Source of the DNA: Macrostomum lignano
Taxonomy: Eukaryota
Assembly (NCBI GenBank): GCA_002269645.1
Contig: NIVC01002178.1
Location: 62,001 to 126,000 of the forward strand
Length of the DNA: 64,000 bases
Direction of reading: 5' to 3'
Every line of letters begins with the position of its first letter. The first letter of the stretch is position 1. The notes below the pieces were generated by a model, which made no database searches, was not told the DNA's origin, and saw only the letters and a list, made by a program, of their open reading frames with translations. Shown here in pieces: positions 26,341-32,300 of this stretch. Made by a program: the position numbers and the translations under genes.

Positions 26341-29300
26341 GTGAGCCGGGGCCGTTCATTATTGTTTTTTCGTCCAGGGTTTCTCCTGCCCCACCTCATT
26401 TCTCCTGGCGCAGACAAAGGAAACTGAGTTGAGCTGAGGCAGCCGGCCAAGGTACAGCGGTTCGGGAAAGTTTTCCCACGCTGGCTAAGGAGGCGCAAGT
26501 GGAGGGGCCGCATTCCCAGGCAAAAGAATCTTCTATTTAATTACGGGTGCAGGCTTCATGCGTTATTCATTCGCGCGGTGTGCGGGGCCGCTGATGCGCT
26601 GCATCTGTTATGAAAGAGGCTGGGCGCATGTCTTGACACTGCGAGAGAGAGAGAGAGGACACTTGAGAGAATCTCCCTGCTTCCTTTTATTCTTTTGCGT
26701 TTTCTCGACAGCAGCGGACCGGATTTCTGGCTTTGTAGCAGAAGCAACAGTTTTTGATGGCTGGCTGAAGGGGAAACTTGGAGAAAAATTTCTTCTTCAT
26801 CAACCAAGTGCCAGAGCCTTCTTTTGTCTCCCCCTCTCTCTCTTTCTCTGAATTAGAAGTGAAAGCAGAAATGGCAAGAGAGAAGAGATGAGGTACGCGG
26901 GGAACAATAAGCCATCGGAGGGAGTTTTCTTGTCTCGTCTTTAAAAAAGGGAGAAATTTCCTGAGAAGTATGAATTAACACCCAGCTTCTAACTGATTGA
27001 CACCTTGGCCCGAAAGTGTCAGGTGGGAATGTCTATGGCCCAACTCCATGGTCTCTCCTCCTGACCGGAAAATCGCAGGTGACGGACACCCGCCTGTCGC
27101 CAAGGACCTCTCGCCACCAGCAGTTGTCCAGCGCTGATGAGCCGGAGCTGGGCTTCTGCCAGACAGGGCTGACGGGATCGCATCAGGACCACTTGGCCAT
27201 GCAGCATCAACAAGACTACCTGGCCTCGTCTCCTCGAGGCCAGAACAACAACAACAACAACAACAACAACAACAATAACAGCGGAGCCTCATCCCCAGCC
27301 TCCTTCGGCGGCGGCAACGGCGGTGGCATGGAATCTGCTGACATGGTGCTGAGTTCGACATCCGCCGGAGGACCATTCGAGTGTCTGGCGCAGGTATTCT
27401 TTTCGAAAAAATTTTTTCGCAGGCGCTGTTTTGAATATGAGATGCGCCGTTTCGAAAATGAGATGCGCCGTTTCAAGAATGAGATGCGCCGTTTCAAGAA
27501 TGAGATTCGCCGTTTCAAGAATGAGATTCGCTGTTTCAAGAATGAGATGCGCCGTTTCAAGAATGAGATGCGCCGTTTCAAGAATGAGATGCGCCGTTTC
27601 AAGAATGAGATGCGCCGTTTCAAGAATGAGATGCGCCGTTTCAAGAATGAGATGCTCCATTTCGAATTTGGCATGCGCTATTTTTGTTTCTTTTCTAAAC
27701 AAATTCCTTCAAGACTGGAAGATGCATCAGCCCCATTCGCTTCCATCTGTGCCCCCTTCTCCTAGGAGACACAGGCAATCCAACCCAGCAACCCAAGCAA
27801 GAAAATTAGCCGCGCACTCCTTGATGACATTTCTCGGCTCTTCCCATCTCTTACGCGCAGGCCGCAGGAATTCCCACTTCGAGACTCTCCTGAATCTAAA
27901 ATTGATGGGGCATCGAACAGCTCGAGTCTTCTCCCCCCCCACCCGCCCCATGAATATCTGATTCCAGCGGCTGGTCTCCAGGAATCCTGTGCCAGAATTC
28001 TTCGAAGAAATTGCTTGGATTGGGTTTTAAACTGCTCGACCGCCGGGCTCCCCTGGGGATGCGTGGGAGCAGCAAGTCATCGAACTCGACACCTCAGTAG
28101 TGGCCCGCCTGCTCCTTCGAGAAACCTGAGAGGCCCATAAAGAATTCTACGACAGCTCCGAAATGCTGTTCACTTTGCTATCGCGAGGCCCGTCTCTATG
28201 TATGGGAGGCCATAGGAGTTTTAGAAGGGCTGGAAATGCCCAGCTGTACAGTTCAAAGTCAATGGCCCGCGCTCCAAGTGGGACAGCGAAAGACAAAGAA
28301 AATGACAGAACTGGCACTTCAGTTCTAGCGGAAGTCGGCGGCTGCTGCAGGCTGCCTGCTCGTCAGAGGGTGCGGGCGGTCGGGCAAAGAAAAACCGGGG
28401 CCCTCATTTTGCATTCAAAAAGCTGCTCCATAATTTGTGTTTCTTTAGCCTTTGCCCGGAAGAAGGAAGCAGAAGGAAACTGGGGGGAACAATGAAGAAA
28501 GCTGACTGAAGGCCAGAAAATGCGTTTTTGGGTTCGTGACGGGGCAGAAAAGAAGAGGCGAGGCAGGAAAAAGTCGAGAGCACCCGCTTTCTGCTTCTTG
28601 TCTGCCTGAGTTCTTTTGTGTCAATCTCACACTGTCTGCTTATTTACCTACCGATCTACATGTACTCTACCAACCAACCTACCTACCACCTACCTACCTA
28701 CCTACCTACCTACCTACCTACCTACCTACCTACCTACCTACCTACCTACCTACCTACCTACCTACCTACCCATCTATCTCTATCTATCTATCTATCTATC
28801 TATCTATCTATCTATCTATCTATCTATCTATCTATCTATCTATCTATCTATCTATCTATCTATCTATCTATCTATCTATCTATCTATCTATCTATCTATC
28901 TATCTATCTATCCATCTATCTATCTATCTATCTATCTATCTATCTATCTATCTATCTATCTATCTATCTATCTATCTATCTATCTATCTATCTATCTATC
29001 TCGACAATACAACAGGCGGCCCAGTTGCAAGTCAAGTCCCGGGTCACAGAGTCTTGGGTCTCCAGGGCACCTCCCAGCCCAGCCGTTCAACCCGCCAGCT
29101 TCTGGTTGTTAATCTCTGACATTCCAATCCTTGTTCCAGTCGGCCTGACATCACTGTTTACACTGCATGGGCCACCGGAGTCCCCCACCAGCTGGGCCCA
29201 GCTTCGGGTGCCCCAAGTCACTTCTCCCAGATTCAGCTTCCTCCGAAAATTCCTTTTCTTCCTCCCCGCAACTCCGCCAGGCGCGGTTGTAAACAGAGGC

Positions 29301-32300
29301 ATCAACGGGTCTGTAACCAACTTCTCTACTATAAGCAACACAAAATGCATTACCCTCTTAGCTAGTTTCCACTGGCTAATATAGTTTTGTTTACCTGGGC
29401 ATCTCTGTGTCTCCTATTACCGTATTAGCAGCTAATTGCGGCTTTGTCTCGATGGGGGAGTTGGGCCGGGCGGGCAACGAAACACCTGTGGAGTCGCAGG
29501 TTCCGAGCAAAGCGGAACCCGTATTCGAAATGATTCCCTAACCAATTCTCAATCGAATATGCGCGCAGACCACGACGCTGACGCCAATCCACCTGCGCAA
29601 GGCCAAGCTGCTGTTCTTCTACAACCGCTACCCCAGCTCCGCGGTGCTCAAGGCCTACTTCCCGGACGTGAAGTTCAACAAGAACAACACGGCACAACTG
29701 GTGAAGTGGTTCTCCAATTTTCGGTGAGCTTTTAAATCTCATTTATTAAAAATTCAGTTTTTTTAGTGTTCCTCCGATATCGAATCAATCTAAAGCACTC
29801 AGACTGAGTCTTCATCTCAATCGCATCAGAAAGCCTCTTTCAGCAGTGCTCAGCTTGGCTCTTCTCCCGCACGTCTCAATTGGAAAGCGCTGATTGAATC
29901 TCTTTCTCTCTCTCTCTCTCTTCCATCTTTGTCTTTCGCATTTCTGCAACCGGGCGCTGAGAAGACAAATCCCCAGCAGAGAGCATCTGCCTGCTCCGTC
30001 TCCCCATTGTCTGGCAAAGAGGTTTCTGAGTAAGTGAGCGAGCGAAGCCTGAGTGAATTGCGATTCTCAGTGCGCTGCTCCGCTGAGCTTTTTAATATTA
30101 TTGTTCCGTGACTGCTCTGCTAGCAAAAGATGGCAAGACTGCGCTGGAGAGGCTGGGTGGGAAAAGGAGCGGGGCGCGCAGAACCTCAGCGTCTAAAATC
30201 AGAGATAACTGCCGGCTGCATTTGCTCCGTTATTCACTTATTCACCAATCTCTCTAAAATCTCTTTCTGTTTCTCCTGTTCTGCGATAGCCTTGTTTGCT
30301 CCACTCACCTCGGATAGGCTGCTTAAGCCTGTGTGTGCGTTCCGCCTCTGCAATCCCATTGTGACGGCTGGCACTCCGAGGCGGGATCTGAGATCTATGT
30401 AATCCTTGCCACCTCTCTGGTCTGTTGCGCATCTATCCAGACTTGTCTTGCATGGCTGGAATTATTAAGATTCAATAGATGAGAGACAGAGAGAGAGAGA
30501 GAGAGAGAGAGAGAGAGAGAGAGAGAGAGAGAGAGAGAGAGAGAGAGAGAGAGAGAGAGAGAGAGAGAGAGAGAGAGAGAGAGAGAGAGAGAGAGAGAGA
30601 GAGAGAGAGAGAGAAGCTGAGAGAGAGACGGATGCGAAGAAAGACTGGCAGGGGTTGTGGCATGGACAGAGACGGAATGAGACAGGGAGAGAGACAGGGG
30701 GAGAGACAGGGAGAGAGACAGGGAGAGAGACGGGGGGAGAGACTGGGAGAGAGACAGGGAGAGAGACAGGGAGAGAGACAGGGGGAGAGACAGAGAGAGA
30801 GAGACAGGGAGAGAGACAGGGAGAGAGACAGGGAGAGAGACAGGGAGAGAGACGGGGAGAGAGACAGGGAGAGAGACAGGGAGAGAGACAGGGAGAGAGA
30901 CGGGGAGAGAGACAGGGAGAGAGACAGGGAGAGAGACAGGGAGAGAGACAGGGAGAGAGACGGGGAGAGAGACAGGGAGAGAGACAGGGAGAGAGACAGG
31001 GAGAGAGACAGAGAGAGAGACGGGGAGAGAGACAGGGAGAGAGACAGGGAGAGAGACAGGGGGAGAGACAGAGAGAGAGACGGGGGGAGAGACTGGGGGA
31101 GAGACAGGGAGAGAGACAGGGAGAGAGACGGGGGGAGAGACTGGGAGAGAGACGGGGGAAGAGACAGGGGGAGAGATAGGGAGAGAGACGGGGGGAGAGA
31201 CTGGGAGAGAGACAGGGGGAGAGACAAGGAGCAAGATACAAGGGCAAACTGAAAGTCAGAACGTAGAGACAGGCAGACAGGGCTGCTGCTGCCCAGTCCC
31301 TTGAAGCTGAAAGCAGAGATATTTCGGAGGCCTCAGCTCAGAAGCCAAATAATCAGTTTATGAGGCCGCTGAGGCGAGAGGCAGAGAGAGAGGTGGTACA
31401 GAAGGAAAAGTTGCGTGTCGAGTCGCAGCAAAGAAATTTATGCAGATGTTCGGGACAGTCCTCTTTTTGTCGAGTCATTCTTGGCATGTGCGCGGCGTAT
31501 TTTTTTCCGGAGAAAATTGCTTTAGCCACTTTTGAAGCGCCGGCACCACCGGTTCTTCCCCGGGTCTTAAGTGGCGACCTCGGCCTCGAACCCCTGGTGG
31601 GAATTAGGCGGTTTGGGATCGGGGAAGACAGTTTCTAGGGGGATTCCGTATTTTGTGAAAAGCTCGCGGGTTGCCAAATTGAGTTAGGAAGCGGCCCGAC
31701 TACAACTTGGCGACTCTGCTGACTTGAAACAGCTCCGCATCTTACTTGGCGCCATTCTCAGAGATGTTTTATAACTTTTGTCCAATGATTTAAACTGGAA
31801 AAAGAGTTTTCCCAATTCCATGGTGGGTTTCCCAGATTAGGCAACTTGGCCGACTCACCGCGGGGGGGGGGATAATTTGGTGGCGCTTCGGACCCGAGGC
31901 AGAGTCAACACTGCAGGAGAAGGTTACAGGGAGAAGCCGAGGCTCACTAAATCTGACTAACAGCGGCAACCCAAAATGCTTATTTGACTTACTCGCTTTG
32001 GTTCTTCGCCTCTGCACCACCTCTCTTCATTATTCCCAAATTTCTGCTTGCCGAGGGAATCGCGGATATTGAGAAGTGATCTCAGGGGAGCTCTTCCCCC
32101 ATACGCGTTAGGGGGGGAGGTGAGAATGCAACCAAGTGGATGAGGGTGGGCCCGGAATGAAGGCAAAGTGTAGATTTCTGGGCCTCGGCTGGGTCATCAA
32201 AATAATTAACTATCAGCGCACCTTCGGGCGCCTGGGGTCTTGGTCAAACATCGCCCCCCTCCCCGGCCTAGGAGAAGCAGAGACTCAAGGCCGGCCGTGA

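What the first reader, a model, noticed from the sequence alone, without database searches (positions are those of the whole stretch)
27394..29568. prospero intron at the Drosophila twintron position carries a degenerate U12 (minor-spliceosome) signature
Seen: the donor is GTATTCTTTT, one mismatch from the U12 consensus RTATCCTTT and unlike the other donors here (mostly GTRAG or GTT). TTCCCTAAC at 29534-29542 is one mismatch from the U12 branch site TTCCTTAAC. There is no pyrimidine tract and no intervening AG before the acceptor at 29568. The phase-0 junction falls three residues before [11 protein letters not shown]. Established (from memory): Drosophila pros has a U12 AT-AC intron with a nested U2 intron at the equivalent position (…|SSTLTPMHLRKAKL), and vertebrate PROX1 has a U12 intron in this region. 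Inference: this is a GT-AG minor intron, or one caught mid-conversion to U2. It is informative about minor-spliceosome retention in this lineage. The branch site is about 26 nt from the AG, somewhat longer than typical.
Basis: partly seen in the sequence, partly recalled or inferred. Interest (0 to 1): 0.78.

Follow-up and report, generated by a model that had tools for sequence, protein, structure and literature searches.

The report
Ancient minor intron turning major
In the flatworm Macrostomum lignano, the prospero intron that other animals splice with the rare minor (U12) spliceosome keeps a near-perfect U12 signature, but it has GT-AG ends, U1-friendly flanks and U2-like spacing, so it is most likely a minor intron caught while converting to an ordinary one.

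Summary
The window is Macrostomum lignano contig NIVC01002178.1. The intron at 27394-29568 interrupts prospero in phase 0, three codons before [11 protein letters not shown]. That is the position of the AT-AC U12 intron in a bivalve, an annelid and an octopus; a vertebrate PROX1 junction lies one codon off in the protein alignment. A bryozoan has a canonical GT-AG U12 intron at the same position. The donor cag|GTATTCTTT matches the U12 consensus at 8 of 9 bases. The branch-like TTCCCTAAC also matches at 8 of 9, and the two other genomic copies of the locus carry the perfect TTCCTTAAC. This is inherited signal, not chance. First, AG sits at exon positions -2/-1, which is reported absent from validated GT-AG U12 introns and able to convert them to U2 use. 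Second, there are 26 nt between the branch motif and the intron end, against 9-14 nt in five orthologues. Third, the two departures from consensus do not harm U2 use. My best reading is a recently converted or converting "minor-like" intron, now mainly spliced by the major spliceosome (about 0.55). Continued U12 dependence (about 0.25) is not excluded. Whether M. lignano has minor snRNAs could not be tested here.

The parts
27079..27393 (+). Prospero exon 2 (VTDTRLSPR...GGPFECLAQ). It ends ...GCG CAG, which places A and G at positions -2/-1 of the donor.
   Evidence: The five-exon model gives 858 aa, the same length as the product annotated at this locus, and ends at the same stop.
27394..27402 (+). 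5' splice site GTATTCTTT. It matches the U12 GT-AG consensus GTATCCTTT at 8 of 9 bases, with T instead of C at +5. With the exon end it reads CAG|GTA, which gives six contiguous pairs to the U1 5' end.
   Evidence: The L005 paralogue is identical.
27394..29568 (+). The intron: 2175 nt, phase 0, GT-AG. It is orthologous to the prospero/PROX1 U12 intron.
27437..27663 (+). 21-nt tandem repeat (10.8 copies of ATGAGATGCGCCGTTTCAAGA) just inside the intron. It is a passenger repeat, present with 9.8 copies in L005.
28690..29001 (+). Tetranucleotide microsatellite inside the intron ((ACCT)n running into (ATCT)n, about 78 units here and about 122 in L005). It is a passenger repeat and accounts for the length difference between the copies.
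29534..29542 (+). Branch-site motif TTCCCTAAC. It is one T-to-C change away from the U12 consensus TTCCTTAAC, which is intact in both other genomic copies. It also contains the only yUnAy (CTAAC) in the last 45 nt.
29543..29566 (+). Spacer CAATTCTCAATCGAATATGCGCGC. It has no AG or AC and is not pyrimidine-rich. It makes the interval from motif to intron end 26 nt, against 9-14 nt in the U12 orthologues.
29567..29568 (+). 3' splice site AG (cgcAG|ACC), the first AG downstream of the branch motif.
29569..29723 (+). Homeodomain exon ([52 protein letters not shown]).

Best explanation
This is the M. lignano orthologue of the ancient AT-AC U12 intron of prospero/PROX1. In this lineage the termini have switched to GT-AG, as they also have in the bryozoan Bugula. 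The intron has then gained features that hand it to the major spliceosome.

Proposed mechanism (inferred):
- U1 pairs with CAG|GUA across positions -3 to +3.
- U2 uses the old U12 branch box (UUCCUUAAC, or UUCCCUAAC in this copy) as an ordinary yUnAy branch site.
- The first AG downstream, 27-28 nt from the branch adenosine, is taken as an AG-dependent acceptor with a weak pyrimidine tract.

On this reading the near-intact U12 motifs are a young relic, possibly still bound weakly by U11/U12. The intron then belongs to what Olthof et al. call the minor-like/hybrid class, a snapshot of U12-to-U2 conversion.

Shown here: the sequence features, the orthology, the perfect motif in the paralogues, and indirect RNA support for the junction. 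Inferred: which spliceosome acts.
For: 1. Orthology. The same position and phase holds an AT-AC U12 intron in Solemya, Lamellibrachia and Octopus, and a vertebrate PROX1 junction lies one codon away. The 5' splice site ATATCCTTT was seen in Solemya, Lamellibrachia and the vertebrate; in Octopus only the 3' end was in the fetched DNA. The branch motif is TTCCTTAAC or AACCTTGAC, with 9-14 nt to the terminal AC. Bugula has caa|GTATCCTTT...TTCCTTAAC plus 10 nt ending in AG.
2. AG at -2/-1. None of the four orthologous U12 donors seen has it (ctc|, atg|, gcg|, caa|). Kwon et al. report it in no validated GT-AG U12 intron, and it is sufficient to switch introns to U2 splicing (PMC10853781). Olthof et al. 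find A-2G-1 in 3% of minor introns and 32% of minor-like introns (PMC11347168).
3. Spacing. The interval is 26 nt, against a U12 optimum of 11-13 (PMC3584512).
4. Nature of the departures from consensus. The window-specific T-to-C in the branch box breaks a U12 pair but keeps yUnAy (UUAAC to CUAAC). It is one of only two window-specific changes in the last 298 nt.
5. Background introns. M. lignano U2 donors are lax at +4 to +6 (GTGCGC, GTAAAT, GTTTGT), and prospero intron A has an equally poor pyrimidine tract. This intron therefore fits the local U2 range.
6. Pairing energies. An unconstrained duplex of the donor with the U1 5' end gives -7.4 kcal/mol. That is within the -6.1 to -8.3 range of neighbouring U2 donors and stronger than the U12 orthologues at -2.6 and -4.6.
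7. End state in another flatworm. In Taenia the intron at the same position is plainly U2-like (GTGGGT...TTAAATTAAG).
8. Junction use. My model with this junction is 858 aa, equal to the product annotated on this contig. That annotation derives from RNA-seq assemblies (PMC5730564).
Against: - The motifs are too well kept for an old relic. In the sequence ancestral to the three genomic copies, 17 of 18 motif positions match the U12 consensus, although U2 splicing would constrain only about 7 of them. Either the conversion is very recent or the U12 signals are still under selection.
- The +5 C-to-U change keeps G-U wobble pairing with U11 and U6atac, so it need not abolish U12 recognition.
- There is no pyrimidine tract, and the exon begins with A at +1. 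Both are typical of U12 introns.
- The frequency rules for AG|GT and for spacing come from human data and may not hold in flatworms.
- No direct RNA, lariat or knock-down data were available.
Confidence: 0.55

Rival explanations
1. It is still a working GT-AG U12-type intron. U11 and U6atac pair with GUAUUCUUU using a G-U wobble at +5. U12 pairs with the branch box, which is perfect in two of the three copies. The flatworm minor spliceosome tolerates AG at -2/-1 and an unusually distant 3' splice site.
For: - The motifs are retained almost perfectly, which neutral decay would not preserve for long.
- There is no pyrimidine tract.
- A is at +1 of the downstream exon, which Kwon et al. report as a U12 bias.
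- Minor snRNAs exist in other flatworms (PMC2770079; PMC6312358; PMC10639083).
- PWM classifiers such as intronIC search -55 to -5 for the branch motif and ignore spacing (PMC7367187), so they would probably score both axes as U12-like.
Against: - AG|GT is absent from validated GT-AG U12 introns and switches them to U2 splicing.
- C at +5 is part of the extended, nearly invariant U12 donor motif (PMC2831892), and here it is T.
- The spacing is 26 nt, against an optimum of 11-13 and 9-14 in five orthologues.
- The window copy tolerates a change in the branch box that disrupts U12 pairing.
- Whether M. lignano has a minor spliceosome is unverified.
Confidence: 0.25
2. The intron has dual or regulatory use. 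Both spliceosomes compete for it, or U11/U12 binds the retained motifs and modulates U2-type splicing, as in the U11-binding enhancer (USSE) of the 48K/65K genes. A minor product might use a non-canonical 3' site about 12 nt after the branch (AAT|CGA at 29553/29554), which is in frame and adds RICAQ.
For: - Motif retention combined with U2-type geometry is what a shared intron would look like.
- Kwon et al. and Olthof et al. describe natural introns used by both systems.
- Selection of the U12 3' site depends on distance and is error-prone.
- The frame stays open from 29542 to the exon.
- Drosophila regulates prospero through competition between the two spliceosomes at this position.
Against: - No second donor or acceptor set was found.
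- The longest annotated product is 858 aa, not 863, so no RICAQ isoform was annotated.
- The idea rests on no direct evidence here.
Confidence: 0.15
3. The resemblance is chance: an ordinary U2 intron that happens to look like a U12 intron.
For: Single near-matches to each 9-mer do occur elsewhere in the window.
Against: - The joint probability for one intron is of order 1e-5 or less.
- The paralogues carry the exact 9-mer.
- This is the very intron that is U12-type in molluscs, an annelid, a bryozoan, insects and vertebrates.
Confidence: 0.01

Closest known systems
AT-AC U12 intron of prospero/PROX1 (Drosophila pros intron 2, human PROX1 intron 4)
   Same: The position is just upstream of (S/T)(S/T)TLTPxHLRKAKL and the phase is 0. 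The extended donor box, the TTCCTTAAC branch box and the lack of a pyrimidine tract are shared.
   Different: This intron has GT-AG instead of AT-AC termini, T at +5, AG at exon positions -2/-1, and 26 nt rather than 9-14 nt from the branch box to the intron end.
Drosophila prospero twintron (a U2 intron nested in the U12 intron)
   Same: It is the same gene and the same intron position, and both show an interplay of U2-like and U12-like signals.
   Different: The twintron has two separate sets of splice sites and yields products that differ by 29 aa. Here there is a single donor and a single acceptor with mixed character, and no second set was found. The literature describes the twintron as limited to insects (PMC3291851).
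Bugula neritina prospero intron (GT-AG subtype U12)
   Same: It is the same position and the termini have likewise switched to GT-AG.
   Different: Bugula keeps the canonical caa|GTATCCTTT donor, has no AG at -2/-1, and has 10 nt from the branch box to the AG. It is a textbook U12 GT-AG intron.
"Minor-like" and "hybrid" intron classes (Olthof et al. 2024) and AG|GT class-switched introns (Kwon et al. 2024)
   Same: The motifs resemble U12 but score lower, G-1 and A-2G-1 are enriched, the branch box is weakened, and the introns are interpreted as snapshots of minor-to-major conversion.
   Different: Those classes were defined by PWM scores, mainly in vertebrates and plants. I could not compute those scores here, and the long spacing is not part of their definition.
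Taenia solium prospero intron (U2-type)
   Same: It is a flatworm and the position and phase are the same.
   Different: No U12 resemblance is left (GTGGGT...TTAAATTAAG). It shows the fully converted end state.

Membership tests
U12-type (minor) intron, GT-AG subtype | Extended 5' splice site RTATCCTT(T) at +1 to +9 | tested here: inconclusive
   GTATTCTTT matches at 8 of 9 bases. The mismatch is at +5, within the nearly invariant donor box, although U at +5 could still wobble-pair with G in U11 and U6atac.
U12-type (minor) intron, GT-AG subtype | Branch box TCCTTRAC / TTCCTTAAC | tested here: inconclusive
   The window copy reads TTCCCTAAC, one mismatch that breaks a U12 pair. The two paralogous copies read TTCCTTAAC exactly.
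U12-type (minor) intron, GT-AG subtype | Short distance from branch box to 3' splice site (optimum 11-13 nt from the branch adenosine) | tested here: not met
   The branch adenosine is 27-28 nt from the intron end, and 26 nt follow the 9-mer. The same interval is 9, 9, 9, 10 and 14 nt in five orthologues. The optimum is taken from PMC3584512.
U12-type (minor) intron, GT-AG subtype | No AG at exon positions -2/-1 (Kwon et al. 2024) | tested here: not met
   The exon ends ...GCGCAG. The rule comes from PMC10853781.
U12-type (minor) intron, GT-AG subtype | No distinct polypyrimidine tract | tested here: met
   Positions -20 to -3 are 50% pyrimidine, the joint lowest of the 10 introns examined.
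U12-type (minor) intron, GT-AG subtype | Orthology to an established U12 intron | tested here: met
U12-type (minor) intron, GT-AG subtype | Excision depends on U11/U12/U4atac/U6atac, and these exist in the organism | not testable with these tools
   Only the 64-kb window and three ~28-kb loci of M. lignano were available, and Rfam found no snRNA in the window. Minor snRNAs are published for Schistosoma and Schmidtea. Nothing was found for Macrostomum.
U2-type (major) GT-AG intron | GT-AG termini with a donor complementary to the U1 5' end | tested here: met
   CAG|GTA gives six contiguous pairs from -3 to +3, while +4 to +6 do not pair. This is comparable to other M. lignano donors such as gag|GTTTGT and aag|GTGCGC.
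U2-type (major) GT-AG intron | A yUnAy branch site about 18-40 nt upstream, with the acceptor as the first AG downstream | tested here: met
   CTAAC (TTAAC in the paralogues) is the only yUnAy in the last 45 nt. Its adenosine is 27-28 nt from the AG, and no AG intervenes.
U2-type (major) GT-AG intron | Polypyrimidine tract | tested here: inconclusive
   The tract is weak at 0.50. Prospero intron A, an ordinary GTGAGC...CGCAG intron, is equally weak.
Spliceosomal twintron (Drosophila prospero type) | Two sets of splice sites, one per spliceosome, at one intron position | tested here: not met
   Between 27000 and 29700 there is no other RTATCCTT-like site with up to one mismatch. The only other branch-like site is 1.7 kb from the acceptor.

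The most novel reading that the evidence does not exclude
The intron may still be removed, wholly or partly, by the minor spliceosome despite AG at -2/-1, U at +5 and a 27-nt distance from branch to 3' splice site. That would mean the flatworm minor spliceosome works under looser rules than the human one. Alternatively, bound U11/U12 may act as a regulator of U2-type splicing at prospero. That would be a second, independently evolved form of two-spliceosome control at the position where insects evolved the twintron.
Probability: 0.25. Interest if true: 0.6.

Novelty: new member of a known kind. Interest (0 to 1): 0.35.

Why it matters
The prospero/PROX1 intron is reported as one of only two minor introns kept in all insects and vertebrates examined (PMC3291851). 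Conversion of AT-AC U12 introns to U2 type is thought to be rare and to pass through a GT-AG stage (PMC2831892).

Across the species compared here the intron shows a graded series at one position:
- AT-AC U12 in molluscs, an annelid and a vertebrate.
- Canonical GT-AG U12 in a bryozoan.
- GT-AG with intact U12 boxes but U2 geometry and an AG|GT flank in Macrostomum.
- Plain U2 in Taenia.

These lineages are not a line of descent, so the series illustrates possible stages of the proposed pathway rather than tracing it. It also supplies a natural substrate for testing the recently proposed rules for spliceosome choice (exonic AG, spacing).

M. lignano has a published transgenesis method (PMC5730564), so the question is testable. 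This remains a single-locus example of a known process, not a new mechanism.

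Tried and rejected
- **Published PWMs.** I looked for matrices or U12 intron sequence lists in order to score the intron. The Olthof 2019 supplements hold coordinates only. The Larue & Roy 2023 supplement held has no flatworm entries, and no supplements are held for Olthof 2024. 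I therefore computed no formal intronIC or SpliceRack score and give none.
- **Annotated protein.** Only the match in length and stop position supports identity with the annotation.
- **Relatives of the prospero protein.** The first homologue search returned no M. lignano or other Macrostomum prospero protein. No closer species could be compared, and no transcript from a relative was available.
- **Insect comparison.** The Dendroctonus locus came back with exons on both strands and runs of N, so it could not be used. Insects rest on the literature only.
- **Papers not held.** Scamborova 2004 and Levine & Durbin 2001 are not in the library.
- **Other U12 signals in the window.** No exact RTATCCTT occurs on either strand, and Rfam found no snRNA.
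- **Duplex energies.** The unconstrained energies are register-blind and partly noisy, for example the U6atac values. I use only the U1 and U12 trends.
- **A 3' splice-site shift.** I considered a shift from an old site about 11 nt after the branch box. I rejected it as unnecessary, because the junction relative to the protein is the same as in the other spiralian species compared. An insertion in the spacer is simpler.
- **A 29-nt duplication in the 3' region.** The idea came from TCGAAATG and TCGAATATG lying 29 nt apart. There is no similarity beyond those 8 nt.

Full report
**What is in the window**

The + strand between about 24.5 and 33.6 kb carries a five-exon prospero gene.
- Start codon at 24565; exon 1 ends at 26340.
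- Exon 2 is 27079-27393.
- The homeodomain exon is 29569-29723.
- The remaining exons are 33002-33146 and 33450-33635.

The homeo-prospero region finds Prospero/PROX proteins across Bilateria (PF05044). Its C-terminal ...[11 protein letters not shown] resembles the spiralian forms.

A MYLIP-like gene lies downstream at 36.3-44.5 kb. It is 100% identical to Macrostomum lignano BOX15_Mlig019534g1 over the query. Window 26289-46000 is 100% identical to GCA_002269645.1 contig NIVC01002178.1 (locus L004). The organism is therefore the free-living flatworm M. lignano (Platyhelminthes, Macrostomorpha).

The assembly holds two further copies of the locus, L005 and L006. This agrees with the published redundancy of this genome (PMC5730564).

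**The observation**

- The donor is cag|GTATTCTTTT at 27394.
- TTCCCTAAC is at 29534-29542.
- No AG or AC occurs in the 24 nt before the terminal AG at 29567-29568.
- The junction is phase 0 and is followed by [14 protein letters not shown].

I mapped nine other introns in prospero and MYLIP. Their donors are of the GTRAG or GTT type, 3-6 mismatches from GTATCCTTT. Their best branch-like 9-mers are at least 3 mismatches from TTCCTTAAC. One-mismatch matches to either 9-mer occur at roughly 1e-4 per position. The joint occurrence at the two ends of one intron is therefore not chance.

**Orthology**

I fetched the genomic loci of prospero homologues.
- In Solemya velum, Lamellibrachia satsuma and Octopus vulgaris, the exon encoding (T/S)(S/T)TLTPMHLRKAKL is preceded by TTCCTTAAC (AACCTTGAC in Lamellibrachia), then 9 nt ending in AC.
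- The upstream exon ends at ATATCCTTT in the two loci where it was within reach.
- A vertebrate PROX1 locus shows gcg|ATATCCTTT...TTCCTTAAC plus 14 nt ending in AC. Its junction is one codon off in the protein alignment.
- Bugula neritina has caa|GTATCCTTT...TTCCTTAAC plus 10 nt ending in AG. This is a canonical GT-AG U12 intron at the same codon.

The literature states that pros intron 2 and PROX1 intron 4 are orthologous AT-AC U12 introns. It also states that this is one of two minor introns present in all insects and vertebrates examined, and that the nested U2 intron (the twintron) is restricted to insects (PMC2831892, PMC3291851, PMC3564746). The M. lignano intron sits three codons before LTP, the same position and phase as in the spiralian species. 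The homology claim is established.

**New facts that change the picture**

1. Both other M. lignano copies carry the perfect TTCCTTAAC at the same place. The C in the window copy is one of only two window-specific substitutions in the last 298 nt of the intron. The "degenerate" branch site is thus a very recent single change from a perfect consensus. The donor is identical in L005. L006 begins inside the intron.
2. The upstream exon ends in AG. Kwon et al. found no AG at -2/-1 in any validated GT-AG U12 intron, regard predicted AG|GT U12 introns as misclassified U2 introns, and converted U12 introns to U2 splicing by creating this AG (PMC10853781). Olthof et al. report A-2G-1 in 3% of minor and 32% of "minor-like" introns (PMC11347168). 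None of the orthologous U12 donors I examined has it.
3. The spacing is 26 nt after the 9-mer, against 9, 9, 9, 10 and 14 nt in the orthologues and a stated U12 optimum of 11-13 nt (PMC3584512). Because the junction has not moved relative to the protein, about 16 nt must have been inserted between the branch box and the acceptor.
4. The branch box contains the only yUnAy in the last 45 nt, at a typical U2 distance, and the acceptor is the first AG downstream. The window's T-to-C change keeps yUnAy (UUAAC to CUAAC) while breaking a U12 pair.
5. In Taenia solium the intron at the same position is plainly U2-like (GTGGGT...TTAAATTAAG). The 3' end in the monogenean Cichlidogyrus also lacks any U12 box.

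**Is the junction used?**

My model with this junction gives 858 aa. That is the product length recorded for the gene annotated at this place on the contig, and it ends at the same stop. The GenBank annotation of this assembly derives from RNA-seq-guided transcript assemblies (PMC5730564). The in-frame alternative 12 nt after the branch (29553|29554) would give 863 aa, and the longest recorded product is 858. This support is indirect, because I could not retrieve the annotated protein itself.

**Weighing the readings**

For a U2-spliced relic:
- AG|GTA gives six contiguous U1 pairs.
- The spacing and the first-AG rule fit U2.
- Local U2 donors are lax, and the pyrimidine tract of prospero intron A is just as weak.
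- The branch-box substitution is of the kind U2 constraint permits.
- A related flatworm shows the fully converted end state.

Against it, and in favour of continued U12 use:
- In the ancestor of the three copies, 17 of 18 motif positions match the U12 consensus, although U2 splicing would constrain only about seven. Neutral decay should erase this quickly. Either conversion is very recent or the boxes are still selected.
- U at +5 keeps wobble pairing with U11 and U6atac.
- There is no pyrimidine tract.
- Other flatworms have all four minor snRNAs (PMC2770079, PMC6312358, PMC10639083).

PWM classifiers cannot settle the matter. intronIC accepts a branch motif anywhere from -55 to -5, so it would probably score both axes as U12-like. 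I could not obtain the matrices and report no score.

My estimates are:
- Mainly U2-spliced, recently converted or converting: about 0.55.
- Still mainly U12-dependent: about 0.25.
- Dual or regulatory use: about 0.15.
- Chance resemblance: about 0.01.

**Comparison with known systems and novelty**

This is not a Drosophila-type twintron, because no second set of signals exists. As a U12 intron it fails two tested criteria (spacing and exonic AG), is equivocal on two (donor +5 and the window's branch box), and meets two (no pyrimidine tract, orthology).

It fits the published concept of "minor-like/hybrid" introns as intermediates of minor-to-major conversion through a GT-AG stage (Burge et al. 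1998, as cited in PMC2831892; PMC11347168). I found no paper discussing minor splicing in Macrostomum, so the instance itself appears undescribed. It is a new member of a known kind.

Its value is as a clean natural intermediate in one of the most conserved minor introns, in an animal with a published transgenesis method.

**Limits**

- There are no genome-wide data for M. lignano: no snRNAs, no minor-specific proteins and no other U12 introns.
- No closer Macrostomum species was available.
- There are no direct RNA reads or lariats.
- The human-derived rules may not transfer to flatworms.

Noticed in passing
L002 4664-6832 and 10001-35984; L011 1-524 and 10001-58625; L003; L001 19499-19708: Public annotations break at the AT-AC prospero intron. 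Lamellibrachia and the vertebrate locus have the upstream exons called as a separate gene that ends at or just past the ATATCCTTT donor. Octopus, Capitella and several gastropods have 153-155-aa fragments; the Octopus model starts at the M of MHLRKAKL, and I infer the same for the others from their length. [quoted passage not shown]
   Followed up: partly
L006 2284-2440 (compare window 29569-29723): The third M. lignano copy of the homeodomain exon has three or four missing bases, in C runs and in ...TCTCC..., which break the reading frame. They could be long-read assembly errors or the start of pseudogenisation of one copy.
   Followed up: no
window 27437-27663; L005 1587-1792; L006 1-170: A 21-nt minisatellite (ATGAGATGCGCCGTTTCAAGA) begins 43 nt inside the intron. 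It has 10.8 copies here and 9.8 in L005. It is open in the exon-2 frame, so the reading frame runs on from the exon to 27762, and intron retention would add about 120 residues. One contig (L006) ends inside it.
   Followed up: partly
window 28690-29001, 9500-9873, 10262-12964, 13657-14494: The repeat load is very heavy. There are (ACCT)n/(ATCT)n microsatellites of about 80-120 units, a 2.7-kb array of a G-rich 21-mer (128 copies), and GAGAGATTA arrays. The 21-mer array explains the GC skew of 0.6-0.9 at 10-14 kb.
   Followed up: partly
window 43869-44263: MYLIP intron 6 has the donor gag|GTTTGT, and MYLIP intron 1 has aag|GTGCGC. M. lignano U2 donors appear tolerant at +3 to +6, which lowers the barrier for a U12 donor to be used by U1.
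   Followed up: partly
window 29521-29530: GTATTCGAAA lies 48 nt before the acceptor and repeats the donor's GTATTC...CGAAA. TCGAAATG and TCGAATATG recur 29 nt apart. I judged this to be chance, with no similarity beyond 8 nt.
   Followed up: partly
window 46.6-57 kb (+) and 7.9-9.1 kb (+): The neighbouring genes are an ADAM17-like metalloprotease downstream (Reprolysin and ADAM17_MPD hits are recorded for the annotated 752-aa product) and a coiled-coil ORF upstream. The order prospero, MYLIP, ADAM17-like is kept in L004 and L005; L006 could not be checked, because the contig ends within prospero and no downstream gene was listed.
   Followed up: no
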